Shown: piece by piece, positions 34,459 through 63,733 of the stretch | How positions within the stretch are numbered: the stretch's first letter is position 1 | Layout: each line of letters starts with the position of its first letter | Origin: Ylistrum balloti | Lineage: Eukaryota | Assembly: GCF_031769215.1 (NCBI RefSeq) | Contig: NW_026782081.1 | Coordinates: 682,001 to 746,000, forward strand | Direction: 5' to 3' | Length of the DNA: 64,000 bases | The notes under the pieces: generated by a model | What the model was told of the DNA's origin: nothing | What the model saw: only the letters and a program-made list of their open reading frames with translations | Databases searched by the model: none | Translations under genes and position numbers: made by a program

Positions 34459-37400
34459 ATGGACACTACTTTGGATATCATGATATCCTTCATCGTGTGG
34501 GCTTGTCTCAGCGCTACAGGTAAAATTCAATAATCCTACCTGTATCATTATTTAGATTACGATTTGTTTACATGTTGATACATGGATAAGAAAAGGGGAT
34601 ATGGTACTTTGGGCTTAGGGAGAGTTTGCAATGTTCTTACTTTGAATACAGAGTGTATTTCATGTATGAGAAAGTGAAATGATATGTTATACCTTGTCAG
34701 ACTGTACATACGCTGTTCCCGATTTTGTATTGCTCTAGGAAATTTATTTTAGTTTTCCGCAATAAATATTGAATGTTTGGATGTGTATGTCTTTGAACGA
34801 TTCAGTGTTGCGCACTCATATTGAATCAAATAAAGAGATAAAAGAATAGGATCATAATCACCAACAAAGAAATGATACATTGAATACCAGGGAAGGTGGA
34901 AACGTTGCATACAATTAAAATTTTGCGCTCGTTATCATTTCATTTCTTCTCTTGCGATTGTTTAATTAACAATAATAAACAACCCGGCAACATTAAAATG
35001 CATGAAAGTGAAAAAGAAAAAATCGTATAGGTAGGTATGTTTGTATCGGAAAAGACGAATACATAGTAGTTGTGCATACCTGCTGTGTAGAGTATATACA
35101 TACCTTAATGGTCCAGGGGATGTGGTCAATGTTTACGAACAACACAGGCGGTCAGTGTTTATATAATGACCTGACCTTGAACTGACCGTTGGTCTTTCAT
35201 CCAGTTACCAAACAGCCATAAGCAAAATTAAATAACATAATAGGCATGTAAATAGCCGAAAACACTACTTTAATATTAACTTTTCTCACATACTCAACAG
35301 AATCATTTCGTGGTCGCTAGATATGGATAATCCTAACTTACACGGATCAGAGAACGGCAGCTAACACGTGCACGCACTTTGAGTTTGTCTGGTCAGCACA
35401 AGGCTTGCCAAACTTGTACAATTAGGCTACGGTATCCATGTCCACAGAACAGACCAGTGTTTGAGTATTCTCGCCTCAGTGATGTCGTGTTTATTTATTG
35501 TTTTTTAGACATTGTTGATTTTTTGTTTGTTTTCAGGAGTGGCTCATAGTTATGGTTCTGACTGTGTACATGATATTCCACACGAGGTCACCTACCTACC
35601 GAGCCGTGATAACTGTACTCTGGTAAGATCTGCCAGTTCATACAATTCTGTTTTTTAATATACATTTGTTTGTGAGGGTGGTAAGTGTTAATATATAACT
35701 GTGTTAAGGTAATTTATTATAGTGTCATGACATTACACAATTGTGTACATGTTATATGTTGTGTTGCCATGACAATAAAAAAACTGTGCATAGGTAATAT
35801 ATTCAGCCAATATACAACTTGGTGTACAACACAAAGAATCCTACACAATGAGCGGGGATACACAAATAAAACGATCGGATGAATAACATTTTTGCAAGCA
35901 TTTATGTATTATGAAATAGCGTTTTGTAAGACTGACGTTAAAACTGAAATGGCTAAATACTTTATGATTTTTTCATTGGTGACGTAACAATAAACTTGAC
36001 AGCTAGAATTTTTTGACCACACAATTTCATAACGAGGGAACTTCTAGTCATAACCTACATTGCTTGGTATTATTACTCAATAAAATCACTATTGCGACAT
36101 AACATTCCCCCCATAATTTTCATCAACCTGCATCTTTTGAACCCCTATGTTGCGAGTTTATCCGTTAGTTGACGACTTCCTACAAGAAAATCGTAATAAT
36201 GGGAACAGGCGCTTAAATATAGGATCAACTGGGATATGTAAATACCATGGAGATGCAGGGATATTGCTGTCCAGAAATGGAAAATTCACCATAGGGAAAT
36301 CCTAGCATACAGCTTGGTGGACAGCTGTCCATGTTGGTTTTGTTGTAGTATCTGAGAGGACAGATATAGCTATAAGAATTGAGAATATTGACCATTGGTG
36401 TTGTATACAATACATGAGAAGGTGTTATACGTTTTGAGGGTTGAAAACAGCTGATGATTGATAGTTGATTCTGTAACAGACATGCTAAAACAAGGTATGA
36501 ATTATTTTTTATAGAATCACGTGACCTCGACAAGATTACAGAATATGCGGCAGTTGTTTCAAGACTATAATTTGGATGCCTACATCGTCACTACACAGGA
36601 TGCTCATCACGTAAGTTGGCATTAGATCACCTAGTATTAAGCAATCAATATTTCCTACCTTATATACATCTTCAAATTGTTAGCAAAATAATCAATATTT
36701 TTTGTTGACGATCAATAATTTGCAAACGGCGCCTTCTTGTGCTTGAATAATGTTTTCTTTTTATATTACAGCAACAAGGAGGGTCCCCACATGATAGGCG
36801 CTTACAAGCCATATCCGGCTTTGATGGAACAATTGGTAATTCTAAAATTAACACGTGGATTCCAGTTTTTTTTCTCTGCATTTGTATGCGTACAAGATCC
36901 TTTCACAAGTTTAATTTTCTGATAGAATACCTTGGCATCTTAAAAGTGAATTAATGGTTTAGTGGGGAGTTTATTGAAGATATACCATCTGTTCACAGCT
37001 AATACCGAGAGGAAAAGGAAACGCAATTAGTAGAAAGTTTATATTGTAAATCAAATCCTTGACGTAGTAGAAAGTTTATATTGTAAATCAAATCCTTGAC
37101 GTACACCCTTTAAACTTGATAATTGTGTGCATTTGAGTTAGGTCCCTATGGTACCGTATTAAAATCACTGATGCATAACTAAACTGCGCACGCCGCTTGT
37201 ACAAAAGAATAAGAGACAAAAGCACGATATCTCGCACCCAGTATAAAGGATTGGTTCAAAATCTGTGTGTGCGAATCTTCAGACATATCCGTCTTGATTT
37301 CCCACATTTTAAGCATAAACAGTTCACCGTATAAAATGCCACGGCTCTCCGAAGTTGACAGGGGTAGTGCCATTGCACTTCTTATGCAAGGTACCCCGCA

Positions 37401-40400
37401 AAATCAGGTCGCTAATCTATTTGGAGTCTATCTATCGAACATTTGCTGTCTCATCCAAAGACTACATGCCACCGGAGGGGTTGCAGACCGTCCCCGAAGC
37501 GCTCGCCCTCGTGTGACGACGCGTCGGCAGGATAGGACAATGCGACTTTCGCACCTACGCAATCGCTTTCTGACGGCTAAGGAAACAACAATGAAAACCA
37601 TTGGGCGTCATCATGTTCCAATTGATCCAAAGACAGTGCGTACTCGACTTCGTGCCTTCGGTCTAAGACCGCGGTGGCCATATGTTGGACCACAGCTTTA
37701 TGCGTGGCGACGTGCCAACCGAATGCAATGGCTGAACGCACATTCCGTAAGACGCTTCCCAATGCAACGTTGGGAAAGGGTCCTGTTCTGAGATGAGTTC
37801 AGGTTTTCGCTTTACGAAGCAGACGGCCGACGTCGTGTCTATAGACGTACCCACGAGCGCTATGCAGATGCTTGCGTGATAGTGAATGACCGCTTTGGAG
37901 GAGGATCGGTCATGGAATGGGGAGGGATTGCGCATGGTATAAAAACTCGTTATTCAGGGAAATCTCACGGCCGTCCGCTATAGAGATCAAGTCCTAGCGC
38001 CGCATGTTGTTCCTCTAGTACAGCAGCGTCAACTGACGTTTCTGCAGGACAACACCCGGCCGCATGTAGCGAGGGTTTGCCGTGGTTATTTCGCAACAAA
38101 CAATTTTCACACCCTAGACTGACCCCCATACAGCCCTGACCTCTCCCCAATAGAACATTTATGGGACGTGTTGAACAGAAGGATAAGACGTAGGCCGAAT
38201 CCTCCAATCAACGTCGCTCAGTTGGCGTTGGCGCTGGATGAGGAATGGAATCGTATACCACCAATGAGGAGGGTTAATACCCCGATCAATTCAATGCACA
38301 AAAGAGTTGGTGCAGTTACTGCAGCTCGCGGAGGGCACACACGATATTGAAAGGTCCAGAATGCACTTCGTTTTGACTGGGGTACTCTTGAATCAACGTC
38401 AGATTTGAAAGGTTTACTTAACGTACACGAATGAAATTCACGTAGATGACAGAGATGTCAACTATCTTCCAGTTACACCGTTACACCATAATTACATTCT
38501 AAAACCCTTCTCTATTTCCCGTAGTTGACCTGGAAATTCCTAATTGCGTTTCTTTTTCCTCTTAGTATATAATATAAATATCAACTTTATTTATTCCACT
38601 TATACTAATCGCTCTTGTTAGCCAGGATGTAAGCGCACAAAGGGTTTTATTGTGGGAGGGAACCGGAGTACCCGGGGAAAACTCACATCCTTTCTGGACG
38701 AATAGGTGAAAGGCGAGTGCTTTACCACTGCCCCATCCGACCACCCTTCATTCACATTATTTAGCTGTAGTCATTGATGTCTTTCTTTTGCTGAAATAGA
38801 TTGAAATGAAATTCAAAACACACAAAAAACAAAACTACTTTCAGGTGCTGCTGTTATCACACGTGAAAAAGCAGTCATTTGGACAGACGGACGTAACGTA
38901 GAGGCAGCCATGAGAATGGATTGTGGTTGGCAGATATACAGAAAAGGTACTCATGAATGCATGTCCGCAAAAATGGCAGCGGTTGTTTCGGAATACAACA
39001 CGAGTTTCTATATCATAAGAAAAATATTGCTGAAGATCGTCTTCCATTCCTCGTGACGTGTGATTGTCGTTGATATGATCGCTATCAGATCTGGCCCCAC
39101 TTGTATAAAACATCTCAATTTAAGATTTCCTCAAGCCCATATTTTCCTCAGCTAATATCTCCTTGAAAATATCTTGTATGAAAATTCCTCAAGGAATTTC
39201 AGAACATCCTAGCCGATGACTTCCTCCTGTTCCTTGAGAAAATTTTATACAAGCCGTTTTCGAGATATCAGCTGAGGAAAATCTCGACTTGAGGAAATCT
39301 CAAGTTGAGATGTTTTATGCAAGTGGGTCCTGCAAGCTTAAACTGAGAAATGATAAGTAAATACTTACATCTCAACATCAACACAATTCAAACTAAAATA
39401 TGTCGATTTCCACAGATCGGTCACCTGTTTTACTAACTTAACGCTCTCTCTACCTTAAAACACCATTACTTATTGCGTTATGGATCGTGGTAAATGCAAT
39501 ATAATCCTCTTAGTCAACTTAATGAAAGTAGAAACTATTAAAAAGGGCAGTAGAAAGAAACAGTATAGTAAATGTGGAATGGCTAACAGATTAGAGGTTT
39601 TCTTCTGTATTATCAAGTACTGACTATGTCGCTGAACGCATAACCGATTTTGTCGTCATTTAATTGTAAGTACGTATTACATATCGTCATCCTAAATCAC
39701 AGCAGGTCTAGTTCCTTAAATATATATTTATAAATGCTAGGTTGATTTTAACAACCTTATAATTAAATTGTGTACATATGTTTCGAAATGGCTGTAAAAC
39801 ATATATCAGCACTTTTATAGACTTTGTTTCTCCCTTTAAATAAACCCCTCCTCTAAAAATCAATTCTTAACTGGTCACATGTCTAATATCATTGTTCTCT
39901 TCAATACAGAAAAGTGGTCGTAAAAACTACTTGTAAAGTTTATAAATAGCCTTTAAAAATCAGTTTACAAAAAGCATTTATAAATGTAAAATAAATCTAG
40001 TTAATTTACCCTGAAGACAAAAGAAAAGAATAGATTTGGAAGTTGACAAAGTGGGCAGGTTTACTCATTCAAAGCATAATCTGGCCGTTAAATCTATGTA
40101 GACCTGACCTGATGTTTGATTTAGCAAGTTAGCAAAACTAGCTTTGGTTTCACCTTATGTTTTAATCATCGTTATCTTATGACAAAAATATTTCGTGAAC
40201 ATGTGGAAATTAAGTCTGACAATAACGTTTACAATATTAAAATTTGAAATAATCAGAACTTTTTTGAAAATATCAATGTATTTACATTTTCAATTCAGGG
40301 GCTAAAGGAATACCCGCACTTACATCGTGGGTCAGAACAGAACTTCGTAACGTTACTAGACCTATCATTGGCGCGTGTCCTAGTCTTATGGCGGCAGGTA

Positions 40401-43400
40401 AAGAAATGAACTACTGACCAAAGTTACTCTTATAATAGAAATATATATATACCTAGTTACTATCAGATCTAACGGGGAGATCAAAATCAATTTTATTTAG
40501 TTACATTTCACGCTAACGCATATAATATAAATGTACATAATATCCCGAAATATTCCATATTCTGACCCGAAGGTTGTCGGTCATTTCCATTGTCTATAGG
40601 TAGTTCTGACTACATTGATATCGATCTACTTTCCAATAGCTACAAATAACTACCACCTGCCTTCAATTGCCATTTTCGGTGAGTGAGTACTTTCCTATAA
40701 GTCTTTTATACAATCTGATTATTTTTTTTGGCACGAGCTTCAATTAGAAAGAAGATTCCGTCATTAAAAAAAATAATGTCTTTATGAAAAGTAACAGATT
40801 TTAAAATCCATTTTGAATTTAGTCTGGTGGAAGAATTTCGAACTGAGTTTTTCGAAGGAAAATATAACTATGCTGGGAATTGAAGACGACCTAGTTGGCC
40901 AGGTATGGAATTATGGCCGTCCCCCACAAATTAACGTCACAATCAACGCCCTACCGACGCGATTTGCAGGTGTGTGTATATGTAGCAACAGACATCCAAA
41001 GAAATTTCGGAAACTGCTTTCGTATCACATTTTGTTGTGAGTCTTTGTAATTTACAATGACTGAAAGGATTTGTCATTAAAATTAATAATTCGGTTGTTA
41101 TTACTTTAAATTCTTTTTAAAAAACATGATCACGAAGAAAATATTTTCAATAAGTTTAATGAAGAAATTTCTATAACATCCTTTCATAATTTTATCAATA
41201 ATAGGTTGCTGGGCTCACGTTCGTTATTGTGGACAATAGAGGAATAATGCAAAAAATGTATCAGCAAAAATTGAAGTAGTCCGTGTATACCTCGTGTTTC
41301 AGGTAGAAGCTGGCAAGATAAATTAAAGGATGTCCATTATGAAATGGCCAAAGCCGGTGTAGACGTATTGATAGTGTCGGACCTTGATGAGAATCCTTGT
41401 ATGTTTATTAATGTAATAACGTACCAAACATTTATCTATTTAATAATTATTGTCTATGATTACATTCTTATTCTACTGAAAAAATCGCGACGGATCGCAT
41501 TAATATATTTTTTATCAAATATATTATATCATATAGTTTATCCTATTATTATTATCATGGTACACATTTCGTATTAATTAGAACTGATTTTGCTCGTTTA
41601 TTTAGGGTTGTTCAACCTAAGAGCCTTTTCGTTTGGATTCGATCCATTCTTCTATTCATTTGCTGTGATAGAAAGACGAACTCGTATTGCAAGGTAAACA
41701 CTGATGCTGCGATGTAGAATTTCATAATGAAAATCATCTCGTGAATGACATCTCACCACACAACAATTAGAAAAAGCATAGCCAAACAATAAATTAAACT
41801 GAATCAACCCTAATTTTGATGGTTGTCTTTATAATCATACAAGGACAGAATGTGTATTGCCAGCAAGTTAACGTAGAAGTACGGACCCGTTTTATCATTC
41901 CTTGATGATAATGCACCGCTGTAAAGTTATAGATGATAAAGCCCGTTACAAAGCACCTGTCTCTATTGAAATAAGATGTTAAGGAACCGAATCAATGTAG
42001 TACAGTTCCTTTTGTAAGTGGAAGGATTAAATACAGTATTTAATATCTAATATCGCTAAGAGATAATTAATGTGTAAAACATCCACCATTGATAAATTTC
42101 TCAGGTGACGTGTCAAAAGTTTTTTAGGAAGAGAGAAGGGGGAGGAGTAGGGGAGAGTTGATTTATTATCATTATTATTTTCTTAATAATCGGAATTAAC
42201 ATTTCATATGTCGTCACTTTCCAGGTTATATATCATTGATCACAAGTCGATGCTTTCCCGGATGCCCTCAGACCCTGATGTTCACATCACTCTAGAACAA
42301 CACCTTGATTTAGGAGAAGGACAATGTTTTATGAGAGTAGTAAGTACATCATTTAATACATGTCTTTCTGGTCGTATCTGGCTTCTTAATTGGACTATCA
42401 TTTGATATAGGGTGTAAATTATTTCATTCATGCTTGAACTATTATTGACATTCATCCATATATTATATATATTCTTTTTGTTTTATAAATATCTTTATAT
42501 TTGTAATATGGATTCACCGTTTAAAGAAACAACTACGACATTAGCCTTAGAAGCAGTTTAAATAAAATTCCCATTTTCCTGATAATATCTCAACGAACAA
42601 ATAACAAAACCGATAACAGAGTAACGAAGTGTTCACTAATTGTTAATTTCCTACTGATAGTGGCCTCTTAAGGCTGATTGGTTACAAGGCGTTTAACCAT
42701 AACAGTGTGTACGATAATTAAGTGTGCGCATGATACAATTTGTTATCATGAATTATAACGACTGAATACACATACTACATCTCAACTTTTTTCGGAATTT
42801 TCTGAAAACCAGTGGTGTTGTAACTTCTTCAATGTCTTACCAATGATCTGTAACAGTTGTTGCTCCGGTAATGACGCGGAATATTCCGAGTTAGGAAAAA
42901 CGCCTGACTGAATATATGTAACACGCAAATGAATATGCCGAGTTATGAATAAAACTGCACCACACACCTGCCCCATCCTTCTAGAAGTCTTCATTTTTGC
43001 TACGACATGAAATTATAGAAATCCAGAAAAAATAAGGATATGGAAATGACATAAAAAAATACATAATCCGAATATATAAGGATACATGAAAGCGAAAGTA
43101 GGACATAATTCAATATAAAATGGATCCTAATGTAACGATTTCATTATCCATAGTTATACTTACAAAGTGTACTGGTTTAAATGGAGTCCTTAGAATCAAT
43201 AGTTTCACCAATTCTGATTATATTAGTGTTAAGTTACCTCTGCTTATAACTCTCGATTTGTTTTTGTTTTTGTTTTTTTTTTATTTTAACAACCTTTGGC
43301 ATGACCTATAACCATGATCACATGAGAATCATTTCCCTGAATTTAACGAGGCGACAATAAAATTTATATTTCAGTTTTGTTTCTAGACACTGGAAAAATC

Positions 43401-46400: not shown

Positions 46401-49400
46401 TGCAAAGAAATATACATAAATAAAATTACGTGAAAGTTTGAATTTTGATATTGTGAATTTGTTATGTTTTGAATATATACGGATGTATATGTCATACCAT
46501 TACTAGCCTGTTCAAAACGATCTTGTCGTCAGCAACACTTGAATCACTTGAATATGCTTGCAACGTTCTGAAAAAGAGATGGCAGTGTAAAGTAGATCGG
46601 AGATATATCTCAATATCATACAAAACCTTTTATGTATATGACAACATTAAATTTATTTGTTTCTATTTTAGAAGTATTGGATGATGTTCCAGTTTTATTT
46701 TTCATATACAAGTTCATCAAATGACTTTTCAAATGATCAAATTGTTTTCCGAATATTCAAGAACTGTATTATTCATCAGTGGGAAATACAGATATATATT
46801 TGATAAAGAAATATGTTACTTAGCAGTAAAATATTTACCAAATACATTCTTAATTCATTCATATTGATGAAGAGCAAGATGGAGAATTTTGGATCCAATT
46901 CCACTCACAACAACTGCGATATAGAATTACATGTAAGGTTTCTTTGATGTTGAAGGTGAAACAAGGGAAGAATTGGACCGTTTATGATGCTTTTCATGAG
47001 ATTCTTAACTACAGGAAGTAAGTTCATGTTATGACGATCTTCCTTCTTTTTTTATATTTTATAAATCAAACCAAAGAGAATACGTGTGATAGCGATATAT
47101 TTAGATATATAAATATGTCATAAGCGACAACATGTGCGAAACATTCCCTGAGGCCTCTAATAACATATCTGTTCATTGTAAATAAAACCAAAACAGAAAC
47201 TAGAACCAGCTCCTGAGGTCTTTCGATTTGGATATTTTTTTGCAATTTTATTATCGTTTTGAATTGTCTGTTTAAGCAAAATTTCTTCAAGATTTAAAGT
47301 GATTGTTTTATATTGTTTTTTGTTCCTTTCAGACGAATTCCATATTTCCGCGCTCCAGCGTTTAGAACACTTACCGGAAGTGGCCCGACTGCAGCGCCAA
47401 TTTATAATATGCCGACACCAGAAAATTCTCAACCAATTACATCTGAACACATCTTTATGCAAGACTCAGGAGGCCAATACCTGTAAGTAAAGGTTAAATC
47501 AAGGTTTGTAAGTTTGATGTCATTTTCCTAATTAATGCTGCCTTTCTGGTCGTTTTGAAGTCAATAAAACACATCTGTTTTATTCCCTGTTTATTTTTCT
47601 CAAAAAGTTTTGTAAATTTGTTTAAGTGATGTCTATAATTTTTTAACATCATGTTTTATATTCTGTTTTCAATATATTAAAATCATTCTGAAGAAATACA
47701 GGAACTACAGATATGACAAGGTCCTTCCACTTCGGAAAGCCGACGAAATATGAAAAGGTTCGTAGTTCATAACACATTATACCTACATATATTTACACTG
47801 TGTGTTAAGATGAATGTCCAAAGTAAACAAATACAGATATATTTGATTCATACATACATGTTTGTATATAATTACGATAATTACAGGAGATATACACCCG
47901 GGTATTGATAGGCCATATAAACTTAGCAAAACTGATCTGGCCTGAGGGACGAACAGGTATGTGATAGGAAATTTAATACCCTATTTCAACCCAACAAACA
48001 TTATTATTCTTACTTATATATAACAATATATAAAAAAAAACGTATTTTTGCTTCATACAGCTTTTCAAAAGAACGCTTTATAAATGTAACACTTTTCGTG
48101 TTTCTTGTCACATTCTGGATAAGCAACATCAATACGTTTTCTCAAATAGTAAAAGAAACACACATCAAGATCATTTGTTTCAACAATGTGCTTGATTGCA
48201 AACCTTTAAAGAATCACACAGGTCTCAAACTACATCAAGAATCTGGTAAACTTGGAACCATTAAATGAAATAAAAAGACTGCTTGTGCCTTGCCAATGCT
48301 CTGAATTTGAAATGCTATAAAATGACATGACAGAAATAATATTTAATTTATTAATGAGCATTATGGGAATAGTGTCGTGATTTATAAAGGAACTGACGTA
48401 TTGTGTGTTGTGTTTTTGTAATCAGGACATGACATCGACGCTACTGCGAGGGAGCCACTCTGGGAGTTAGGTCTGGACTACTCTCACGAGACAGGCCATG
48501 GCATCGGTGCTTACGGGGGTGTCATAGAAGGTCTGAACTTTAAACACATATGCATCAAGTTACATTCAATTTCAACATGCTTCAGGTTGTGGCCTTTGTT
48601 GATGATCCCTAATAGCATTGATGCTAAATATGAAGAGCTCACCATTTAAAACTACATTTAGAAGCTTATGTAAAAAATGGTTTCAAAACTAAATTTGCTA
48701 TCAATGTCATTATGCTTGGCCTGCTTATTCGAAAAGAACTAAAGCGTATTTGATACAGCTGAGCAATGCTATCTAATGATCTGTAAGAACTAGTTAAAAA
48801 GATATCAGCGATGTTTGAAATGTACTTAGAAGTCAATAACAATTGTCATTATTTGTTTTCACAATACATTTCAATACGTTCCGATCACATTTCTTTTTCA
48901 CAAATGTTTTATGAAAAAGTTTTCATTTTTTGTTTAGGACCTGGGCGGATATCCTCTACGTATGCTGATTTCATCAGCGACGTTCCATTCTTTGCTGCTA
49001 TTTTTACAAAAGGTAACATCTTCTTATAATTTTCCATTTTTTTATTTACATAGTTAAATTTTGCATTGAACTAAGCTTAAGAAGATATATCATCTTCGTT
49101 TTACCATGCCTTAATTTATCTGACGGCGGAATATATCAGTTCAAATTAATTTCAGATGAAAATATATATAAGTTTCCTGATCCAACAGACTACCCTTTGA
49201 AGAAAAACATGTTTTTCACAGTTGGTAAGTTTGAATTATTTCTTGTCTTGTGCAACAACAATAATATTATAATCTTACCGTGTTCATTTGAAGTCCATTA
49301 CATAGTATGTAGAACAATTACGACATATAATGTTTAGCTTGAAAAATAGCGTATCATTTATTATGAAAGCAGCGAGCTAAGGTATACGTATACAACATTC

Positions 49401-52379: not shown

Positions 52380-55300
52380 ATGTTGCAGGAATCGTGTTTC
52401 CTTTCAACAGTACTACTTTACCTGAGTTTCTTTGCTACACAAGGTAAGTGAAATGACAGGCACATTGAGTTGTTATAGGTACGCTAAGGCTGTTATGCAA
52501 ATCCTGTGATACTGAAAGTATTGTATAACTGTACCTTGAGCTAATATGCGGAGGTCACTTTATCGTTACAGATACAGCACAACACCGGGATTACGTTGGG
52601 TTTATAATACGTAACTGGTAGATACACATTGAAGTTTGCTTCATCCTCATATAGTGTCATAAATAAATATCATTCAATATATACGAGTGGACAAATCAAT
52701 GCATGTGCAATTTAACTAGTAACCCATGTGATTTGTGTTGAGAAACAATTTTAACAAAAGTCATAAACTGGCATTGTATCCACCATTCATTATTTAAGTT
52801 TAACTCTAATTCTATTTGTATTCAAAGGAGTTATTCACTTGAGTATCTTTTGTACAATCTTCCAAATATTAGCATTTTACTTTTCAGGAGTCCCGTGTAA
52901 ATCTTTCATTTGTCCACGTTTTTCTCTAATTTTACGGAATTTGAGTTTGAATTATAATTATGCTCCATTGTTGGTAGTTGGTTCAACATAAAAATATCTT
53001 TTACGTTGAATGCATGCAATTTTACATTAGTGTCTCGCATCATAAAACGGCCAATTAAATTGTTCGCGTTCGATAAACAAAGAATGGAAGACGCATGTCA
53101 ACCATACAATCTATTGTGGTAACTCGAGCAAACCATTTGCTATGTATTTGTGAATATGTTGTTTATATTTCAGGTATTCACTTAACCTTTAACCAACTTA
53201 GTGTATAACAAAGTCATGCTCGATACACATCTCTGCTTTTATGATTAATATATTCTCTATGATTTTATTTATGATCATATTTGGATTAGATCTTGATCTT
53301 GATTTTAAAATAATTTCTTTATCATAAAAAGTAGTTCGGGGGCACAATTATGGATCGGAATGCGTTCAGGACATTCCTCATAACATCGGCTTCCTTTCCC
53401 ACCGAGAAAACTGTACAAGCGTATGTATTTAATTATTTTGATGAGAATTAGTTTTTTTCAATTTTCTTACATATTCTAATAAATATCCAATATTTTATCA
53501 TGCTAATCTTCCCTTAAAAAAACTAAAACTTATTATCAACATATCTTGGCAATATTATTGAAAGATGCAAACACACTTAATGAATAAAGAATCCAGTATC
53601 ATTTTTCTTATTTTTTTTTAGATCTGAGTGGTCTTTCATAAAGAAAACCAAAATAATCAATATATACAATTAACCATTGTATTAAATAAGGAAACACAAT
53701 ATTTTTTTTTCAGAACCCAGTGACGTTATCGAGGGTTGGACGACTCCGAGATATCTTTTCAGACAATGGAATCGACGCTTACATTATCAGCACGGAAGAT
53801 GCTCATTTCGTAAGTATGGTCAAAACATTATTGTTTGTAATCGATATTACACTGGTTGTTTCTTTAGGAATATTACGTTTCCATTGTATCAGGTCTATGA
53901 TTTATTCATAGGCTTCGTCCCACATTAAGACCCTTCACAACGGTGTTTTAACATAAGGCCAGAGCCTATTTCGTAATGCATGTAAAATATGTGTATATCG
54001 TCTATATCAATTGATGGTGGAGTCATTGTTATAACAGTGCATGGCGGTATTGTTTCTGTATTGATAATGATATTGTGCACGCATAAAATATTGGTAGCGC
54101 AGAATGAAATGTCGTTATGAATGGAACCAAGGAAGAAAATACGGTTTATATAGTTTTCCTAACGTGAGATACTCAATAACATATTAGTGTATGATTAAAT
54201 TTGCCGTCCACTTTCAGATGTTATACAGAAGATTGTCGCTCCTGATGCTCTTAGGCTGAGGATAGCCATAACCCAGAAATTAAACATTTAAAAGTTACAC
54301 GAAGGTTAAAATATATCTCCCCGCTATAAGAGATCAGTCATACCGATAACATATTTGAAAGTGATTATCATCGAATACTTTTGTTATATCTTATTGTGCA
54401 TGTTTGGTTGACTGCTGAAATTCATCATATGGTTCCAGTAAGTTAAAGCATTAACTGTGAAGTTAAAGAATAACGGAGATACCTATGTGTAAGTCTCAAG
54501 AGCGATTTCTACTATGCTTTGTGATTTACTAAGAGAGTGTTTGAAATAGTGTTGCTTACATTGAAACGTAGCACATATGCATCCTGCTGTTATTTATATA
54601 ACGGGAGTGGTTTCTGTTCGTTGTTATAGTAATAGTGATGCTAAGTGTAACTCACGTGTAATCATGACTAATTTTAGTATAATTGAGATATCAATTCCAT
54701 TTGATAGGATTTACCGATGATTGAAATTATATCATAGTCGTAATCGATGAAGCAGAAGACGCTTACTCTTCCGGAACACATGTTTTATTCTCCTTGCACT
54801 TTTTAAGGTGTCTCCGAGAAATATTGCTTTTGTTCATATTTGCCTAAGTTTTTATATGTGTTTTGATGACGATTAACACGTCGTATTTTCTTGATGATTT
54901 TTATTGAAAAGAATTCACAATTCAAACGACAATATAATGCATTCTCATCGAGAAATGACAATTCCATTTGTCATGATTTAAGTGTGATTCAAAATTCAAA
55001 GGGGATTGCATTTCACTGATGTGTTATTTAGTCTTATACGTACTTGTCTCTTTAGTGCATTAAGCATGAAGTGTATCCATGGCTGTTTAAAAAAGATTTG
55101 GTGTTCAACACCTTTGACATAAATCTTATCATAATATTGAAATAATATAATATAAAAATAATTGAAGCTCCGAGGATTTCTAATGAGTAAATCACACTAA
55201 AAATACATTGTATATGATAATTTGATAGAAAGTACATCTTATAATGTAAATTAAAATGAGAAAAGTATATTACCAAAGTGAGTGATATTTCAGGTTATAG

Positions 55301-58300
55301 ATAATGAAATTATAAATTACCTTCTGCCATAATTAAGAGACATAGTCAACAAATGTATTTTCATTGTTCACATTTGATCACAATGAAATCAAAATACAAA
55401 AAAATAAAGTTTCGTTAAGGAATAAAACAAAATTTATCAAACTGAGACTTATTCCAAAACCTGTACCAGTTATACAAGGAAATCTTAATTTCATTATGTT
55501 ATGTGCAAAGAATTTTCTTTCAGCGACACAGAAGTTCACCACATGACAGTCGTCTGGCAGCAATATCTGGGTTTCCGGGCTCTATTGGTAGTGTGCTATT
55601 GATCCTCATTTATTTCCTAAATTGCTAATACAGCTTTTTTTAATTTTAATTGATTATTATCATTGTAATTAATAATTTTTGATAATTTTAACTATACACT
55701 AATCCTTTTCATATCAGCTAACAGGGGGGGGGGGGGGGTTATGATTCTTAAACAGACATTTATAAAGAATTGCAAACAAAATCTCTGCCTTTCGGCAAAA
55801 TTGAGAAACTTGATCAAGATGTATGTTTGTATTGTTCACATTTGATTAACTTTGTAGTACTTTTAATTTTAATATAAAGTGAACTATGTAAAACAATAGT
55901 ATTTCGGCATATATTCATCGACCGTAATTGAATTGCTTAATGCTCAGACTTAATATATTTTGTACAACTATAAGTATGCATGGTTCTGCTACATGACAGA
56001 ACAAAAATTGATATACCTATATAAGGCTTCTTATTATATCTCATGCAGTATTGAACAATGGTAGAGTGTCTTACAAAAGCGAGAGATAAAAACAAACGAA
56101 TAAAGAAAGCTAACAATTGGATGTAAACCCATTATTTAGTGGTCATAGTAAAAAATAGATCTTGCTTTACTGTAAAGACTTTCTTTAGGTACTTTGAAAT
56201 TTAATTTGTAAAATACAATGTTTGTATTATAATATCTCTAGTAATTTTGTTTTCATTTTCGAAATACTCTACTAGGCATATTTATCTATTTATTTTATTT
56301 GTAAAATATGTATTTTGATGACATTATTATAACACCTATAATGATTTTTTTTATTTTCGAATGAATACTTATTTATTTATTCATTTATTTGTTGTTGTTA
56401 TGTTTATTGCCTTCAGGTGTAGCCATTGTAACGAAGACCAGACTAGTCCTGTGGTCTGATGGACGAGCCTTCCATGCCGCAAGCGAAAGTTTAGACTGTG
56501 AATGGGAACTCTACAGAAAAGGTGAGTAAGAAACATTTTTGAATCATCAACATTGAAATGTGTAAGTTCTAAATTTTGCACAAGATCTGATAGAGATCTT
56601 GGTGTCTAATCTGTTTTAGGTGGACCGGGTGTGCCTACAATGACAACATGGATCAAACAAGAACTCAAAGATTTCGTAATTGGAGCTTGTCCTGCTTTTC
56701 TTTCATCAGGTAAAACGTTCTTTCGGTGGTCGCTAATCATGTTAATAGTTCTATCAATATACCCCAAATCAACAATTAATACAACACTGAACATTTCTGC
56801 TGTGCATGCACCCAAAATATACGATATTTCGATCTTTGTACTAAAGGATATTAATAAAATAGACAAGTTTCAATTTATTGTTCCAAGTTTGGTGGAGAAA
56901 TTTGGAGATGAGCTGCTCTACTGCCGGTATTCAACTAAAGGCTTTCGAATACGACCTAGTAGAACAGGTTTGGACAGATAACCGTCCTCCTGAAAACAGC
57001 GTCACGATCAATGCCTTGCCAACGCAATTTGCAGGTAAGGTTCAGTGGCAAAGGTAACTGCTTAACATTGCTATTGACGCCGAAATAATTTATCATGAAA
57101 TTGTCACGTGTGCAGTGTCTGATAAAAGAATTTCCTACATGGTAACATGCATTTGGTTCTATTCCACGAATAGGATCACGATAGAAAACTGTACAAAAAT
57201 TACACAAGTGAATAAATTAGAAGTAGAAACTAAAATGTCTTTTATTATGATTATCTTCATATTTTATTATTCGCCGTTGTAAGATGATTGTCATTCAAAT
57301 TCCATTTTTACATATTAAAAGGTTCTGCACAATGCTCATTCTTATTCTGATAATCTCTTAATTGAATTTCGGTCATTGATTATAAACTTCTAAAGATTGA
57401 ATTCTTCTCGTCAAGCCGGACAAATAGGCTTAACTACAATGCTCCAAAATCTAGGTTCATTTGATGACATTAAAAACATTAAAGGGTATCCTGTTTACCC
57501 ACATTTAAGACTACAATGCGTTTATTGGTAGCTATCCCGCGTTGCAAAATACTGATATTAATCGCAGTAGGAGAGTGAAAGAGTTCATAGCTAAATAAAT
57601 GGCACTATAAAAAGTTCAACAGATCTCATTATTTGTGAAAGTTTCATACTATTTCCTCGGAAAGTCGAAAGAAAAGTCAATAAAAGCATCCTCTATGATA
57701 TCGTGTAAAACAAAACAGTATCACCCAGAAGCATGTCATGTACTGCAGAAATATATTGCTAACGTTCTGACATTAATTATATTGGACGCTGGTTTTGTAT
57801 ACTTCAGGCAAAACCTGGCAGGACAAACTAAAAGACATGTATGTAGAAATGGAGTCGGTTGGAGTTGATGTTCTCGTTATTAGTGATCTAGACGAATGTC
57901 CATGTAAGTGTAAGATTATAAGATGTTCCGTTTTTCATAGTTGTACCAAAATGCAAATAACAGGAGAAAAATAAAGATAGGTGTAATTACTTTATGAAAT
58001 CTTTTCATGGCAATGTACATATCAATTGCTGATGATAATTCTGAATGTTATGCTTTCAGGGCTGTTCAACATGAGATCATTCGAATTTGGATTTAGACCT
58101 CACTTTTTTGCATATGCCGTAATCGACAGACGATACAATAATGCCAGGTAATATGACACTAATGTGCCATATGAAATTCCGGATCTTCCAACAAATAACT
58201 TTTCAAGCAGTGTTGAACTATACTACACAATGTGTTCATTTTTTAAAGGTTATATCTGCGTGATCATGTCTCGATACTTACTCGGAAACCTTCGGATCCT

Positions 58301-61300
58301 CATGTCAACATAACGATCATGGAACATCTAAATACGGATGTGAACGGAAAGTGTAAACCACAAATTGAAGATGTAAGGATCAATCTTCTTCTGATATACA
58401 CTAATAGAGTTCATTTTTTTTAGAAACTATTACAGTGTAACCATTATTGAGGAGATGCGTTGTTGGCTGTTGTTGGTCAGAACAGTTGTTTCTGTTTTTA
58501 GAAAGACGATGCCGATTCTGGTGCCTGTGCAGCGATAGACGACGGAGTGAAATCCTGTTCAGCAGTTACTAATACATGTCTTTCAGTAAGATTATTCTTT
58601 GCATTTCCATATTTTTTTTCTGCATATTAGAGTTGATCTTACCAATGATTTAAGCTGTCAAGTGTCCTGATTTGAACGTTGTTTTAATATCCACTATCAA
58701 TTATGTTACTGAATGATGTTAAATATTGATTAACAGACTCCTTGTTAACTTTTTGTATTTCCCTTTAAAAATCCAGATTCTTGACATTTGTGTGATATAT
58801 TGATACTTATCAATTCTTGATATGTCCTTTCAAAATTTTCTAGATATTGTTATCATACTATTACTGAACTCTACTATTGATTCGTGCATTGAACAATCAA
58901 ACTGTACAAACATAAGATCTGTTGATGTTGGAGCACAAACTTGAGCTATGTACATATGTAACATCGTCAATTTAATTTTCTGAACAATTGTCTTTGATAC
59001 ATGGTATGTGAAGGCATTGTAAATTGTTTATGGAAGAGAACTGTGTATAGTTTATTGACCCATGCCACTTGAGGAGGGTTGTTTATAAAGTCACGATATC
59101 AAATATCAAATATAACATTAACTGGCGAATTTTAATAGTAAAATTACATAATAGTACAATCAGATATAGTGTTTAGTGCTAAATGTATGTAATTGATGAT
59201 TTTTTTAAATATGTGGTAAAAGCTCTCGTGTTCAGTTGATGGCCCTTTCGATAACTATTGTTTGAGATTTCAACTTCTGAAGAAACAAAATCAGAAAATC
59301 AGAAGTTGATGTATAAGATATGAAGTCGGCATGTTTTAGATTTTTATTGTCTGTCATTTTTCATAACTTTATATCAAATACATAAAGTGTAATTATGCTC
59401 TAAAATAATGAGTAAATAATTGATCTTTGCAATGTAGGTACGAGAGTACAATTTACAGGACGTACTTGAAGACATCCGACATGCATCGTCGGAGCCCAAC
59501 ACAAGGAAAGTTTGGGTGTCAATCTATTGTAATCACGCCGTGTACTCTGCTGTTCCCAAGGTATAATGTCTACCTTTCTTTCAAACATTCACAATTATTC
59601 TAACAACACCCATACATATGACCATACAGGGCACGAAAATTGCTATTCCAGCGTACCGTGTAATAGTTTTATAGAGGTGATGTTACAATATACTATAGAC
59701 ATTAAGATTATTATCATTTTACATTGAAGTCGAAAATATACCAAGATTTGACACCTGTAGCCATGGCTAAGGCCTTGCGAAATCCGGTTGAAGTGAAAGG
59801 AATGATCGACTCCAATGTAAGTAAAATAACCAAAAAATACAGGAAAGAAACGAGAAAACAACATTGTGAAAATTGCACTCATTTTCCTCAGGGTCTGATA
59901 GCATATGTATAGTACATTTTAAGCTCAACAAGATTGCCATATACATTTGGTAGCTAAGTTAGTCTATGGAAATACAGAGGATTCAAATCGAATATCTATT
60001 CTTCACCAAATGAGAAAGAAATATTTGACAAGCCGGGATCCATATATTTGCAACACGAAATGTGAAAAAGAAAAGAAAAATGGACAGCGCATCTTATTTC
60101 GTCATCGCAAAACATCGCACAGTAACATGAAATAACTTGCGAAACTCTGTCTTTAAGAGGTCTTGTAGTCGGGATTGATTTGAACATGTGCCCAGATTTT
60201 ACCCCCGTTTCATGACTCATATTTCGACTATTCGTGCGAGGTGTTTGATAATAGGGTTCACTGTGAAACATTTCTACGAGTGTAATCGTTTGTTTTTTTC
60301 AGTTGGTCGATTCAGCTGCAGCGATCAGATTTTTTGCAAAACTGGAAAAAGAGGTAAGAAGAATCTCTGAATAGGGAAATTATTGTTTCTTGATTCCACC
60401 TTTATTGATAAGCCACTCACAAGTCAGGAAATTAATCAGTTGTGTGTAGTTATGTTCCCGTATCGTTCCTTTCTGCATTTCATATAATTTGTCATTACAT
60501 ACAGATAAAGCAAGGAAAAGATTGGACAGTCTTTCAAGCATTTCACGACATCTCTAATTATAGAAAGTAAGTATACTTGATTAAAACATTTGAAATGACC
60601 AAAAGTAATAAAAACAGTTTTTTTTAAGTAAAGTGAAAGAGAAAGTAAAAATATTTATGAAAATTGAAACAAACTGAATAAATAAACAATAATAAAAATA
60701 ACAAGTGGGTAGAAACTGAAAGTGTAGAAAACTTTACTTAAAACTTATGCAATAATGTATGCAATAATGCAGATGAGCACAACGCAACGTGATATTTACT
60801 ACATACATGCACATTGGGAAAAAAATGGCAATGCTTACTTACAGAGAAAGTCCTTACTTCCGCTCTCCGGCCTTTAGAACCTTGACCGGAAGCGGTCCAT
60901 CTGCAGCCCATTTGTACAATCTGCCAACTCGTGAGAGGTCTCGTCGGATTACGACCTCAGAAATATTTATGCAGGATACCGGCGGACAGTACCTGTAAGA
61001 AATAGCCAACCATTATAAGTAATCTTCTTTAAACATAAATAATTAGGCAACGTTTGTTTTTCATGTCTCCAGAGCTTTTAATCATTAAGCATACAAGTCA
61101 TTTTAACACATGCCTTCTCTCGGTATGTGCGGGTATACATGAATTGATCATTTGATTTCAATTTAAACTATGCGTGTATGAGCATTTGAGTGTTTCGTAT
61201 TAAACTTATAAAAGGAACGGTTCATCCTTGGAAGATGGAGTTATTGTATATTTTAGATCCTTCTTATTTCAGCTCCTTACATTAAGTTAACGAACAGATA

Positions 61301-63733
61301 AATTTATTTCTAGGGCATGATATTTTAACCAATACTACCTCTACTTCACCGCATTTTTACTACACGAATAACCCATTGAAGTGCATTTGTTTCTTACGAC
61401 TCAGTACATACCAAAACTTTTAAAATTTTCTTCGTCTTTCTCACAGAAATAAAAATATCTATTGTTATAGAAATACTGGCACCACTGATCTCACCAGGTC
61501 TTTCCATTATGGTATGCCAACTGAAACAGAGAAGGTACTGTACCGTCAAGAAATGCATTGAAGTTATGGCGTTGTTAAATAACTACTAGTGTATTTAGAT
61601 AACCGTCTAAATGTCTTCCGTAGTGTACCAGTTATTCTACCATCTAGCCATCACTAATCATGTTCTCATACTATTTAGACGCCACTAATCAGACTGGCCT
61701 ATTATTTGCCCGCCACACATCAAGTCCTAGTTGTTCAATTCTTGATTAAATTTCACCAGTTAATAGTGAAAATAAGAATAACTTCAAAGCAAAACCACTC
61801 TCAAAAATATCAATCTAATTAGTTTAAACAACTGTACAGCTCTGCAGTTTTTAAAAATGTTCCAAATTTAGTTTAATTTATATTTGAAAATGTTCACTGG
61901 TTAACGCTAATTATCCTTTGAGCAACTGAAGACAAATGCCTTACAATCTAGCCGCTACTGATCACGTTGGCCTATCTGACCGCCACTGATTAAGTTGTCC
62001 CACTAAATGACCGAAACTGATCAAGTTGTCCCACTAATTGACCGCCGCCACTAATCGAGGAAGAGAGAGAGCTAGTGTTGTCATCCAGGCGTCGGCGTTG
62101 ATTTTTAAATGCTTAGATTTCGAGAGTGTTGCAAGGCATTATCACATCCCTTTAAAGTTATATTAGGTCAGAGTACTAATGTTTGATATCAGTGTCCTTG
62201 TTGGGTTTGACTTAACCAATAAGTATTGCTGGTAGTTCAAGAACATACTTTTCCAACCTATACTTTGATAAAATCCTGTGTTGATATTAATTTTGATCTA
62301 TCTTTGACCTTTCCTGCCTACATCTAGTTGGTTAAAAAACACTTTTGTATGTAAACCATTCTAGAATCAGCTGCTATAGTAACCCCCTTTGACGGCCATT
62401 AAAAATGTAGACATTATCATAATCTAAACTTAAATTCAATAAAACTGGGCCAAAATACATGAACAAATAAAGACTTACACGGAGGCTTTTGAAATGGACA
62501 GGTGAAAAAAGAATAGACGTTCCGGGAAATTAAGCACCTTCTACTTCACCAACGACAACCGCAATGTAAATAATGGTTAATTCAAGGACTTAATATTGTG
62601 TTCTCAAACAAGGTATACAACAACGGAACCAAGAGGCAAACTAACGAAAATCAAACACGTTCAGCTTCATATCGCACAAAGAAATAGATCATTTCACTAT
62701 GACGACCGTAAAATTTTCCCCATATTTTTCGTCAACCTGCCTCCTTAAATAAATTAATTAAAATCACCCTTATCACAGTTTGTTGTAATCGCTTATGTGT
62801 AATCTTGTCAGCATTTTTTGTTTTGTTTTGTTTCTTGTTTTGTCTAAATGCATGATAAACTATATAAAAGCATTTACAAATGTATATATTATATGTATAT
62901 ATATATATATATAATTGCTTTTCGTTTTTGTTATTTTCGATGTAATTTATTTATTTATTTGTCTGTTTTCCAAAATGCTTCTACATGAATGTATACATGT
63001 TACAGGAAATCTACACCAGAGTTTTAATGGCACTTGTGGATATATCTAAAATCGTATGGCCTAAGGGAAGAACAGGTACGGGTTTAAATAATGCTTGGTT
63101 CTGATTACACCATATTACGTCTTTTCGTGATGTAGAATTATCTGCTCAGGTTACGTAAATTTGTTTGTGAGAGTAGGGTGATTAGATGATGACGTAATAT
63201 TATCTAACTAATTACGTACCTAAAAAGCCAGCTAACAAGAGCAGATAACTGCATTACAACAAAAATCTGTTTCTATATTAAAATGTCTCGATTTGGTCCC
63301 TGGAATACAAATTAGTTGGATTTAAATATTTTAACCTATTTTAAATTTGATGTAATAATAAATAATTTGATTCTTACATATGAGTGTCTTCTACGATATT
63401 TCAAGGCCCGGATTCTAAGAAGATATTGGAAGGTTTGGTACGAGTATTACTGTTTACAAAAACTGATAAATGTGTAATCACAAATGCTAATGTTAATGTA
63501 GATAATCAGTTAAAGTATATATTGGATTATGATTATGTTGACATGCTGGTCTTTTCTGGATGTTTGTTGTGTATATATCCAGTTTTATCAATACTTTTCA
63601 CAAGTATGTTTTCATTGTTGACTGATAGGTCACGATATAGATGCCGTTGCTAGGCAGTATCTTTGGGAAATCGGATTAGACTTCTCTCACGAGAGTGGGC
63701 ATTCAATAGGGGCATATGGAGGTGTGACAGAAG
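52380..63733 (+). CDS. Secreted Xaa-Pro aminopeptidase (M24B, XPNPEP-like) paralog B, first 19 exons, 3' end beyond window
   Basis: Exons: 52380-52443, 53335-53420, 53714-53809, 55524-55587, 56417-56521, 56620-56709, 56888-57034, 57808-57903, 58060-58147, 58249-58372, 58502-58585, 59438-59560, 59730-59816, 60303-60353, 60505-60566, 60845-60994, 61471-61534, 63006-63075, 63629-63733. Same intron phases as paralog A; motifs DTGGQY, GTTDLTRS, HESGHS. Confidence 0.92.
54760..54818 (-). repeat. Short interspersed repeat, inverted copy of the 45440 family
   Basis: gcagaagacgcttactcttccggaacacatgttttattctccttgcactttttaagg. Confidence 0.7.
61950..62058. repeat. Degenerate ~31-bp tandem repeat
   Basis: gaccgccactgattaagttgtcccactaaat / gaccgaaactgatcaagttgtcccactaatt; related motifs at 61645-61720. 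Confidence 0.6.
62060..62400. mobile_element. Possible degenerate non-autonomous Helentron-like fragment
   Basis: tgttgtcatccaggcgtcggcgttg followed by ttgacc-containing body and atagtaaccccctttgacggcc end; resemblance only. Confidence 0.35.

What the first reader, a model, noticed from the sequence alone, without database searches (positions are those of the whole stretch)
34459..63733. Tandem aminopeptidase-P paralogs that keep the metal site but have both lost two catalytic histidines
Seen by exact-register alignment to human XPNPEP1 (recalled sequence). The metal ligands Asp415, Asp426 and His489 are retained in both paralogs; Glu523 and Glu537 are retained in A (B's are outside the window). 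His395 (GPNGAIIHY) is Tyr in both (GPTAAPIYN; GPSAAHLYN), and His498 (NVHEG) is Ile in A (GVIEG) and Thr in B (GVTEG). His485 is kept, but the following Gly is Glu in both. Known: the E. coli APP equivalents His243 and His361 are important for substrate positioning and catalysis. Both genes are long, intact and multi-exon, so the changes predate the duplication and appear tolerated. Inference: an undescribed secreted M24B subfamily with a different reaction or specificity, or a metal-binding pseudo-enzyme or peptide-binding protein.
Basis: partly seen in the sequence, partly recalled or inferred. Interest (0 to 1): 0.78.

Follow-up and report, generated by a model that had tools for sequence, protein, structure and literature searches.

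The report
Scallop aminopeptidase-P paralogs lacking catalytic histidines
Two neighbouring scallop genes belong to an old, well-conserved family in scallops, mussels and oysters: secreted aminopeptidase-P-like proteins that keep the two-metal centre but have replaced both "universally conserved" substrate-positioning histidines, so they probably no longer work as ordinary Xaa-Pro aminopeptidases.

Summary
The window (Ylistrum balloti contig) holds two intact tandem 24-exon genes. A spans 34459-51276 and equals XP_060067951.1. B starts at 52380 and runs 2.1 kb past the window; its RefSeq model is N-truncated. Against human XPNPEP1 (PDB 3CTZ), both keep Asp415, Asp426, His485, His489, Glu523, Tyr527, Arg535 and Glu537. 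His395 is Tyr in both, His498 is Ile (A) or Thr (B), and Gly486 is Glu.

These are not private oddities. They mark a clade with 100/100 support in scallops, mussels and oysters, nested in the secreted/membrane APP2-like branch. The clade also shares changes at Glu41, Tyr78, Glu359, Tyr396 and Leu495, plus a 22-27-residue insert. None of 127 other APPs examined lacks either histidine.

The genes are under strong purifying selection (dN/dS about 0.08-0.10). Relatives are transcribed, and one mussel member was detected in a gill proteome. The scallop genome also keeps canonical APP1 and APP2-like genes.

Function is untested. My favoured reading is a metal-dependent protein with remodelled substrate handling. 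A non-catalytic binder is nearly as likely. This is a new variant of a known kind, of moderate interest.

The parts
34459..51276 (+). Gene A: 24 coding exons, 728 aa, identical to XP_060067951.1 ('xaa-Pro aminopeptidase ApepP-like', Ylistrum balloti). It has an N-terminal hydrophobic leader and no C-terminal hydrophobic tail.
   Evidence: The exact spliced model reproduces P0018. Pfam finds Creatinase_N, Creatinase_N_2, Peptidase_M24 and Peptidase_M24_C. AF2 gives pLDDT 88.7, and Foldseek's top match is 3CTZ with TM 0.93. Termini were inspected.
52380..64000 (+). Gene B: 24 inferred exons, 737 aa. Exons 1-19 lie in the window and exons 20-24 lie beyond it (to window-equivalent 66117, which is C224:748117). 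The RefSeq model XP_060067952.1 covers only exons 6-24.
   Evidence: Exact model of P0017. Five upstream exons with GT-AG introns and no stop. Candidate exon 1. Downstream exons are in L001.
52380..52443 (+). Candidate exon 1 of gene B. It encodes a signal-peptide-like leader, is followed by the donor GTAAGT, is in phase with exon 2, and resembles the leader of the Mizuhopecten B ortholog.
   Evidence: Inferred from sequence; there is no transcript evidence in this species.
53332..56709 (+). Gene B exons 2-6 (53332-53420, 53714-53809, 55524-55587, 56417-56521, 56620-56709). These are intact coding exons; exons 2-5 and the first part of exon 6 are absent from the RefSeq model.
47333..47482 (+). 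Gene A exon 16. It carries Tyr472 (47403-47405, TAT) in place of His395, Asn473 in place of Tyr396, and the retained metal ligand Asp492 (47463-47465, equivalent to Asp415).
48426..48530 (+). Gene A exon 19. The motif His-Glu-Thr-Gly-His (48485-48499) holds His485, Gly486->Glu and His489. Gly573 (48515-48517) replaces Leu495, and Ile576 (48524-48526, ATA) replaces His498.
48976..49187 (+). Gene A clade-specific insert of 23 residues (aa 591-613). It spans the end of exon 20, an intron, and the start of exon 21. It lies between the His498 and Glu523 equivalents.
   Evidence: Model pLDDT in this region is 61-71.
50242..50321 (+). Gene A exon 22. It holds Glu626 (Glu523 equivalent; split codon 49224/50242-50243), Tyr630 (Tyr527), Arg638 (Arg535) and Glu640 (Glu537, 50283-50285).
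60845..60994 (+). Gene B exon 16. Tyr (60915-60917, TAC) replaces His395, Asn replaces Tyr396, and Asp415 is retained (60975-60977).
63629..63733 (+). Gene B exon 19. It holds His-Glu-Ser-Gly-His (63688-63702), Gly in place of Leu495, and Thr (63727-63729, ACA) in place of His498.

Best explanation
Genes A and B are tandem paralogs of a pteriomorph-bivalve clade (scallops, mussels, oysters). The clade arose by duplication of the secreted/membrane APP2-like (XPNPEP2-type) three-domain M24B aminopeptidase P. Shown here: the fold and domain order are those of aminopeptidase P. The five ligands of the two-metal centre, the Arg535/Tyr527 proton-relay residues, His485 and the N-domain Asp-Gly-Arg motif are invariant across the clade. 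The shell that positions the Xaa-Pro scissile bond has been rebuilt. His395 and His498 are gone. Glu41 (the hydrogen-bond partner of His498), Tyr78, Glu359, Tyr396 and Leu495 are replaced. An invariant Glu has appeared next to His485, and a 22-27-residue insert follows the old His498 strand. The genes are under strong purifying selection, and relatives are expressed as RNA and protein. The scallop forms have a leader but no membrane-anchor tail, so they are probably soluble secreted proteins. Inferred: the metal centre still works. The protein still docks a peptide N-terminus on it and still catalyses hydrolysis, but with altered substrate specificity or an altered proton or transition-state route. 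The new Glu486 is the likeliest stand-in. Canonical APP1 and APP2-like genes elsewhere in the same genome cover the ordinary Xaa-Pro aminopeptidase role.
For: Clade: 14 variant sequences form one branch at 100/100, sister (95/93) to a canonical-site heterodont group, inside the mollusc APP2-like clade (quick tree). Signature: every member of the scallop, mussel and oyster clusters whose model covers these positions has it, and none of 127 other APPs lacks either histidine. Clade-wide replacement at nine otherwise at least 90%-conserved columns is shown. Among 16 diverse clade members only 110 of 661 columns are invariant, yet all eight retained active-site residues are among them (hypergeometric P about 5e-7), as are the new Glu486 and Gly495 and the Asp-Gly-Arg motif. 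dN/dS is 0.10 (A) and 0.08 (B) for Ylistrum versus Pecten, and 0.08 versus a related scallop's transcript. The tandem A-then-B order is conserved in Pecten maximus. An intronless 2367-nt Logan contig encodes a full B ortholog. The Mytilus coruscus member A0A6J8CQU3 carries the signature and was identified by mass spectrometry in gill and followed by RT-qPCR (PMC10097965). Canonical APP2-like and APP1-like genes are present on contigs C248 and C492. The Arg535/Tyr527 relay is described as a catalytic device rather than a binding device (PMC5774706).
Against: Replacing the His243 equivalent with Ala abolishes or strongly lowers activity in E. coli and P. aeruginosa PepP (PMC5723419; PMC10377022; PMC4404410). 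The pig enzyme's equivalents of both histidines are assigned to proton shuttling (PMC5774706). Within the clade, positions 395 (Tyr/Leu/Arg/Val/Ile/Phe, or shifted by a 3-residue deletion in oysters) and 498 (Ile/Thr/Val/Leu) vary. No consistent replacement side chain sits at the old places. I could not obtain model coordinates, so I could not check whether Glu486 points at the metal centre. No activity or metal-content data exist.
Confidence: 0.45

Rival explanations
1. Metal-binding pseudo-peptidase. The protein keeps the two-metal centre and the proline pocket only to hold an N-terminal Xaa-Pro peptide or another ligand without cutting it. It would act as a secreted binder, sensor, scavenger or structural protein.
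For: Both histidines that are conserved in every characterised APP are lost. Mutation of one alone inactivates bacterial enzymes. Glu41, the partner of His498, is lost too. Positions 395 and 498 drift within the clade, as expected for sites that no longer have a job. The C. elegans PID-5 APP-related domain is a precedent for an APP-derived pseudo-enzyme. It also carries His-Glu-Thr-Gly-His and lacks the His243 equivalent.
Against: Known M24 pseudo-enzymes such as PID-5 have lost metal ligands. Here all five ligands plus the Arg535/Tyr527 relay are invariant across scallops, mussels and oysters, which is hard to explain by binding alone.
Confidence: 0.35
2. Ordinary Xaa-Pro aminopeptidase. The substitutions are tolerated, and the proteins still remove N-terminal residues before proline with roughly normal kinetics.
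For: Metal ligands, His485, Phe381 (except in oysters), Tyr527, Arg535 and the overall fold are kept. Databases name the proteins Xaa-Pro aminopeptidase by similarity.
Against: None of 127 other APPs lacks either histidine. Published mutants lose activity. At least nine invariant positions around the site changed together, and a canonical paralog is retained in the same genome.
Confidence: 0.12
3. Decaying duplicates or an assembly or annotation artefact.
For: The RefSeq model of B is truncated and named 'uncharacterized'. No RNA run of this species was available.
Against: Both genes have 24 open exons with canonical splice sites. dN/dS is about 0.1. Orthologs exist in at least 15 species, with transcripts and a proteomic identification. 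Contigs of a separate DNA run agree with the coding letters.
Confidence: 0.02

Closest known systems
Membrane-bound aminopeptidase P (XPNPEP2 / APP2; pig and human enzymes) and its canonical mollusc orthologs
   Same: The secretory leader and three-domain architecture are the same. The five metal ligands, His485, Tyr527 and Arg535 are kept. The clade nests inside the APP2-like branch of the tree.
   Different: The equivalents of pig His429 and His532 are absent and Gly486 is Glu. Seven further invariant positions are changed, and there is a 22-27-residue insert. The scallop forms lack the C-terminal hydrophobic (GPI-signal-like) tail that canonical mollusc and vertebrate forms have.
Human cytosolic aminopeptidase P, XPNPEP1 (PDB 3CTZ)
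   Same: It is the best solved match by sequence (E 2.5e-102) and by fold (TM 0.93 by target length). The alignment is collinear over all three domains.
   Different: XPNPEP1 is cytosolic and has no leader. It has His395, Tyr396, Gly486, Leu495, His498 and Glu41, and it has no insert.
APP-related domain of C. elegans PID-5 (proposed 'pseudo-APP')
   Same: It is derived from aminopeptidase P, lacks the His243/His395 equivalent, and carries His-Glu-Thr-Gly-His instead of His-Gly-Thr-Gly-His (PMC10377022).
   Different: PID-5 has lost several metal ligands and is predicted to hold at most one metal. It is cytosolic and fused to an eTudor domain. The bivalve clade keeps all five ligands and is secreted. 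The two arose independently, one from APP1 and the other from APP2-like.
Other non-peptidase members of the pita-bread (M24) fold: Ebp1/PA2G4, Spt16 N-domain, creatinase (own knowledge; Ebp1 homolog in PMC3888471)
   Same: They show that this fold has repeatedly been reused for non-peptidase roles.
   Different: Those proteins lack the metal ligands. They derive from MetAP-like or creatinase branches, not from three-domain APP.
Drosophila sperm leucyl aminopeptidases (S-LAPs, M17)
   Same: They are an analogy only: a lineage-specific expansion of an aminopeptidase family that has diversified functionally (PMC3078892, title and abstract).
   Different: They belong to a different clan and fold, a different organism, and an intracellular sperm context.

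Membership tests
Three-domain aminopeptidase P (M24B, XPNPEP1/2 type) | Domain order Creatinase_N, Creatinase_N_2, Peptidase_M24, Peptidase_M24_C | tested here: met
   Pfam scan of A finds all four domains above their cut-offs. The truncated B model shows the last three.
Three-domain aminopeptidase P (M24B, XPNPEP1/2 type) | Pita-bread catalytic fold and overall structure like solved APPs | tested here: met
   AF2 model has pLDDT 88.7 and pTM 0.88. Foldseek's top hits are 3CTZ, 4S2R and 5JQK with TM 0.85-0.93 by target length.
Three-domain aminopeptidase P (M24B, XPNPEP1/2 type) | Five ligands of the dinuclear metal centre (Asp415, Asp426, His489, Glu523, Glu537) | tested here: met
   Present in A and B and invariant in 16 clade members.
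Three-domain aminopeptidase P (M24B, XPNPEP1/2 type) | [quoted passage not shown] | tested here: not met
   Tyr in A and B. Leu, Arg, Val, Ile or Phe in mussel and oyster members.
Three-domain aminopeptidase P (M24B, XPNPEP1/2 type) | His498 (E. coli His361) with its N-domain acidic partner (Glu41) | tested here: not met
   Ile (A) and Thr (B). Glu41 is Gln (A) and His (B).
Three-domain aminopeptidase P (M24B, XPNPEP1/2 type) | Xaa-Pro aminopeptidase activity (EC 3.4.11.9) | not testable with these tools
APP2-like (secreted/membrane) subfamily | Phylogenetic position within the APP2-like branch, apart from APP1 | tested here: met
   Careful ML tree: the clade lies inside the mollusc APP2-like group, and APP1 sequences form the outgroup.
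APP2-like (secreted/membrane) subfamily | N-terminal signal peptide | tested here: inconclusive
   Hydrophobic leaders are seen by eye in A and in the inferred exon 1 of B. No signal-peptide predictor was available.
APP2-like (secreted/membrane) subfamily | C-terminal hydrophobic GPI-signal-like tail | tested here: not met
   Scallop A and B and the oyster members end in polar residues. Canonical mollusc and vertebrate APP2 forms, and Mytilus paralog v1, have a hydrophobic tail.
APP-derived pseudo-enzyme (PID-5 type) | Loss of metal-coordinating residues | tested here: not met
   All five ligands are retained. PID-5 lacks several.

The most novel reading that the evidence does not exclude
A clade probably more than 400 million years old has turned the aminopeptidase-P scaffold into something with a new job while keeping the two-metal centre. 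One possibility is a hydrolase using a different catalytic route (the acquired Glu486 replacing the histidine pair) on a non-canonical substrate. The other is a secreted metal-dependent receptor for proline-containing peptide N-termini in bivalve gill and other tissues. Either would be the first natural M24B protein known to work without the His243/His361 pair. It would also be a ready-made natural experiment on what those histidines are for.
Probability: 0.4. Interest if true: 0.6.

Novelty: new variant of a known kind. Interest (0 to 1): 0.5.

Why it matters
The two histidines are treated in the literature as universal and essential in Xaa-Pro aminopeptidases and prolidases. This clade dispenses with both. 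It still holds every metal ligand and the proton-relay residues under strong selection in three bivalve orders. That offers a natural test of the proposed catalytic mechanism. It is also a candidate new activity or binding function on the pita-bread fold. Practically, automatic annotation calls these proteins 'Xaa-Pro aminopeptidase' in farmed scallops, mussels and oysters. One member is already reported as a starvation-responsive 'PepP' in a mussel gill proteome, so functional conclusions drawn from that name may be wrong.

Tried and rejected
- RNA evidence in Ylistrum itself: the run search returned only one DNA run, so expression in this species is not shown. I used that run only to confirm the coding letters.
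- The Pfam PF00557 scan of the whole genome did not list the window's own exons. Exon-sized matches are too weak, so paralog counting was done with exon queries instead.
- The big representative search with one 50-aa exon gave only 14 hits. One was a full-length close relative, which served as the entry point. It cannot be read as a census of the family.
- The look-up of encoding contigs had no record for the Mizuhopecten proteins P0015 and P0020. dN/dS therefore uses Pecten maximus and one Logan transcript.
- dS between A and B is saturated, and YN00 failed on some pairs. No omega is given for the A/B split. The ortholog dS values (1.1-1.7) are themselves high, so omega is approximate.
- A first, stricter scan for exon 1 of B found nothing. 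A relaxed scan found a good candidate.
- Model coordinates are not exposed to scripts. The position of Glu486 and of the insert relative to the metal site could not be measured.
- Pseudogene and artefact readings are rejected (see rival explanations).
- The idea that the variant residues are common among characterised enzymes is rejected.
- The scan's earlier notes held nothing on this locus.
Full report
**What is in the window**

Translating stop-free stretches of the first half of the region and comparing them with the second half showed two collinear series of about twenty conserved coding blocks. These are two tandem paralogs.

A search with one exon against the representative library and then a word search returned two NCBI proteins from a contig of exactly the window's contig length (3,659,541 bases):
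- XP_060067951.1, 'xaa-Pro aminopeptidase ApepP-like'
- XP_060067952.1, 'uncharacterized protein LOC132548146'

Both are from the scallop Ylistrum balloti.

A splice-aware exact reconstruction shows that gene A is 24 exons from 34459 to 51276. It translates exactly to the 728-residue XP_060067951.1.

Gene B's RefSeq model (591 aa) begins in the middle of the protein. The window holds five further intact upstream exons with canonical splice sites. It also holds a good candidate first exon at 52380-52443, which encodes a hydrophobic leader resembling that of the Mizuhopecten ortholog. B runs past the window. I fetched the next 9 kb of the same contig and found its last five exons. This gives 24 exons and 737 residues without a stop.

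Contigs from a public DNA run cover the key exons of A and differ from the window only at intronic positions.

**Register against solved structures**

| Human XPNPEP1 residue | Gene A | Gene B |
|---|---|---|
| His395 | Tyr | Tyr |
| Tyr396 | Asn | Asn |
| Asp415, Asp426 | kept | kept |
| His485 | kept | kept |
| Gly486 | Glu | Glu |
| His489 | kept | kept |
| Leu495 | Gly | Gly |
| His498 | Ile | Thr |
| Glu523, Tyr527, Arg535, Glu537 | kept | kept |

In the N-terminal domain, Glu41 is Gln in A and His in B. Glu41 is the hydrogen-bond partner of His498 in the human enzyme according to PMC5774706. Tyr78 of the Asp-Gly-Arg-Tyr motif is Asn in A and Ala in B.

Pfam finds the four domains of three-domain APP. 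An AlphaFold2 model of A built on 74 homologs is confident (pLDDT 88.7, pTM 0.88). The exceptions are the leader, a variable loop near residues 311-330, and the clade-specific insert (pLDDT 61-71). Its best structural match is 3CTZ (TM 0.93 by target length).

**It is a clade, not a private oddity**

In an alignment of 138 APPs, 127 had His at both positions; all but one of those (an ant protein with Glu) also had Gly at 486. The 11 exceptions were scallop A-type, scallop B-type, two Mytilus paralogs and oyster proteins. A further search added Ostrea (two genes with consecutive gene numbers), Saccostrea, Crassostrea and Magallana members. Cluster look-ups showed both Mytilus paralogs in five Mytilus species.

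Every member whose model covers the region has:
- Glu at 486 and Gly at 495
- a non-His residue at 498 (Ile, Thr, Val or Leu)
- a non-His residue at 395 (Tyr, Leu, Arg, Val, Ile or Phe; oysters also have a 3-residue deletion there)
- Val, Ile or Thr instead of the invariant Glu359
- Leu instead of Ile384
- a 22-27-residue insert between the His498 and Glu523 equivalents

A careful maximum-likelihood tree (IQ-TREE, LG+C20) puts all 14 sampled variants on one branch with 100/100 support. Their sister (95/93) is a small heterodont-bivalve group that keeps the canonical site. Both sit inside the mollusc APP2-like clade and well apart from APP1 (quick tree).

The scallop A/B split, the Mytilus v1/v2 split and the Ostrea pair are separate, later duplications. 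The clade spans Pectinida, Mytilida and Ostreida. By my own knowledge of bivalve history, the remodelling is probably older than 400 million years.

**The genome still has the ordinary enzymes**

Exon searches of the whole assembly found only two other APP loci.
- Contig C248 carries a canonical APP2-like gene with His-Tyr, His-Gly-Thr-Gly-His, Val-His-Glu-Gly and no insert.
- Contig C492 carries an APP1-like gene that is also canonical.

**Constraint and expression**

Nei-Gojobori and YN00 estimates between Ylistrum and Pecten maximus give dN/dS of 0.10 for A and 0.08 for B. B against a related scallop's transcript gives 0.08. dS is above 1, so the ratios are approximate, but dN is ten-fold lower.

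The tandem A-then-B arrangement is conserved in Pecten maximus.

Among 16 diverse clade members only 110 of 661 columns are invariant. All eight retained active-site residues are among them (hypergeometric P about 5e-7). So are the newly acquired Glu486 and Gly495 and the N-domain Asp-Gly-Arg motif. The Arg of that motif contacts the inhibitor's proline ring in the C. elegans structure (PMC4404410).

Evidence for expression:
- An intronless 2367-nt Logan contig (SRR19746228) encodes a complete B ortholog carrying the Tyr and Thr residues, so it is a spliced transcript. Several Mytilus and oyster members likewise come from 2.3-2.5 kb Logan contigs.
- The Mytilus coruscus protein A0A6J8CQU3 carries the variant signature. 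It was identified with five unique peptides in a gill proteome, was down-regulated in starvation, and was chosen for RT-qPCR validation under the name 'PepP' (PMC10097965).
- No RNA run of Ylistrum itself was available.

**Localisation**

A, the inferred B, and most clade members begin with a hydrophobic leader. Canonical mollusc and vertebrate APP2 sequences end in a hydrophobic GPI-signal-like tail. The scallop and oyster variants end in polar residues, while Mytilus v1 keeps a hydrophobic tail. The scallop proteins are thus probably soluble and secreted. This is by inspection only.

**How it probably works**

What the literature says about the lost residues:
- The His243 equivalent hydrogen-bonds the carbonyl of the P1' proline, and the His361 equivalent hydrogen-bonds that of P1 (PMC5723419).
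- The pig enzyme's equivalents are assigned to proton shuttling (PMC5774706).
- His243Ala abolishes or strongly lowers activity.

Losing both histidines together with Glu41, Tyr78, Tyr396 and Leu495 means the canonical way of holding the Xaa-Pro bond is gone. Ordinary activity is therefore unlikely (my estimate is 0.12).

The two remaining readings are hard to separate.
- In favour of retained catalysis: the metal ligands are invariant, and so are Arg535 and Tyr527, which are described as a proton relay for the leaving group. An invariant new carboxylate sits at 486. The known APP-derived pseudo-enzyme PID-5 has lost metal ligands.
- In favour of a non-catalytic binder: the positions of the old histidines drift within the clade. 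PID-5 shares both the His-Glu-x-x-His motif and the loss of the His243 equivalent.

I put 0.45 on a metal-dependent hydrolase with changed specificity or mechanism, and 0.35 on a metal-dependent binder. Neither is shown.

**Novelty**

The proteins are in public databases under automatic names. I found no paper that notes the missing histidines or the clade. The library searched is limited to open-access papers and preprints. I rate this as a new variant of a known kind.

**Limits**

- No enzymology was possible.
- There are no transcripts from this species.
- The signal peptides were judged by eye.
- dS is near saturation.

Noticed in passing
window 52380-56709: The RefSeq model of gene B (XP_060067952.1, 591 aa, 'uncharacterized protein') is N-terminally truncated. 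Five intact upstream coding exons and a candidate signal-peptide exon lie in the window. They give a 737-aa protein collinear with gene A and with the Mizuhopecten ortholog.
   Followed up: yes
window 12640-16980 (+): Several open stretches match the N- and C-terminal domains of copper type II ascorbate-dependent monooxygenases (PF01082, PF03712). This suggests a multi-exon DBH/PHM-like gene upstream of gene A.
   Followed up: partly
window 25592-26593 (-): A single 334-codon open reading frame matches rhodopsin-family 7TM receptors over nearly the whole Pfam model (E 6e-26). It is probably an intronless GPCR gene. An assembly gap (N run 24507-24703) lies just beside it.
   Followed up: partly
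window 5163-6333; 21078-21578; 29744-30563; 33432-33917: There are large tandem arrays: 38-bp unit x about 30, 36-bp unit x 14 (96% match), 28-bp unit x 29, and 145-bp unit x 3.4. The last lies just upstream of gene A's start codon.
   Followed up: no
L005:226-312, L005:384-464, L005:2004-2081 (contig C248, minus strand): The canonical APP2-like gene of the same genome has three similar copies of the exon encoding the helix after Asp426 (human residues about 440-465). They may be mutually exclusive alternative exons or exon duplicates.
   Followed up: no
window 48938-49012 and 49156-49224 (gene A exons 20 and 21): The canonical gene encodes the stretch between the His498 and Glu523 equivalents in one exon. 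The variant genes use two exons, and each ends in a similar Ser/Thr-Asp-x-Pro ... Phe-Phe pattern. The clade's insert may have arisen by partial tandem duplication of that exon. The peptides are too short for a significance test.
   Followed up: partly
window 48040, 48060, 48327, 48381, 48559: Contigs of the only public DNA run that holds this stretch differ from the assembly at five intronic places (two substitutions, three small deletions) and at no coding place. The run therefore represents another haplotype or individual.
   Followed up: partly
P0074 (Nucella lapillus protein): This gastropod canonical APP2-like model carries a tandem repeat of the Gly-Pro-Gly...Phe-Phe-Ser-Asp segment (55 instead of 29 residues between the His498 and Glu523 equivalents). 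It may be an annotation that joins two alternative exons.
   Followed up: no
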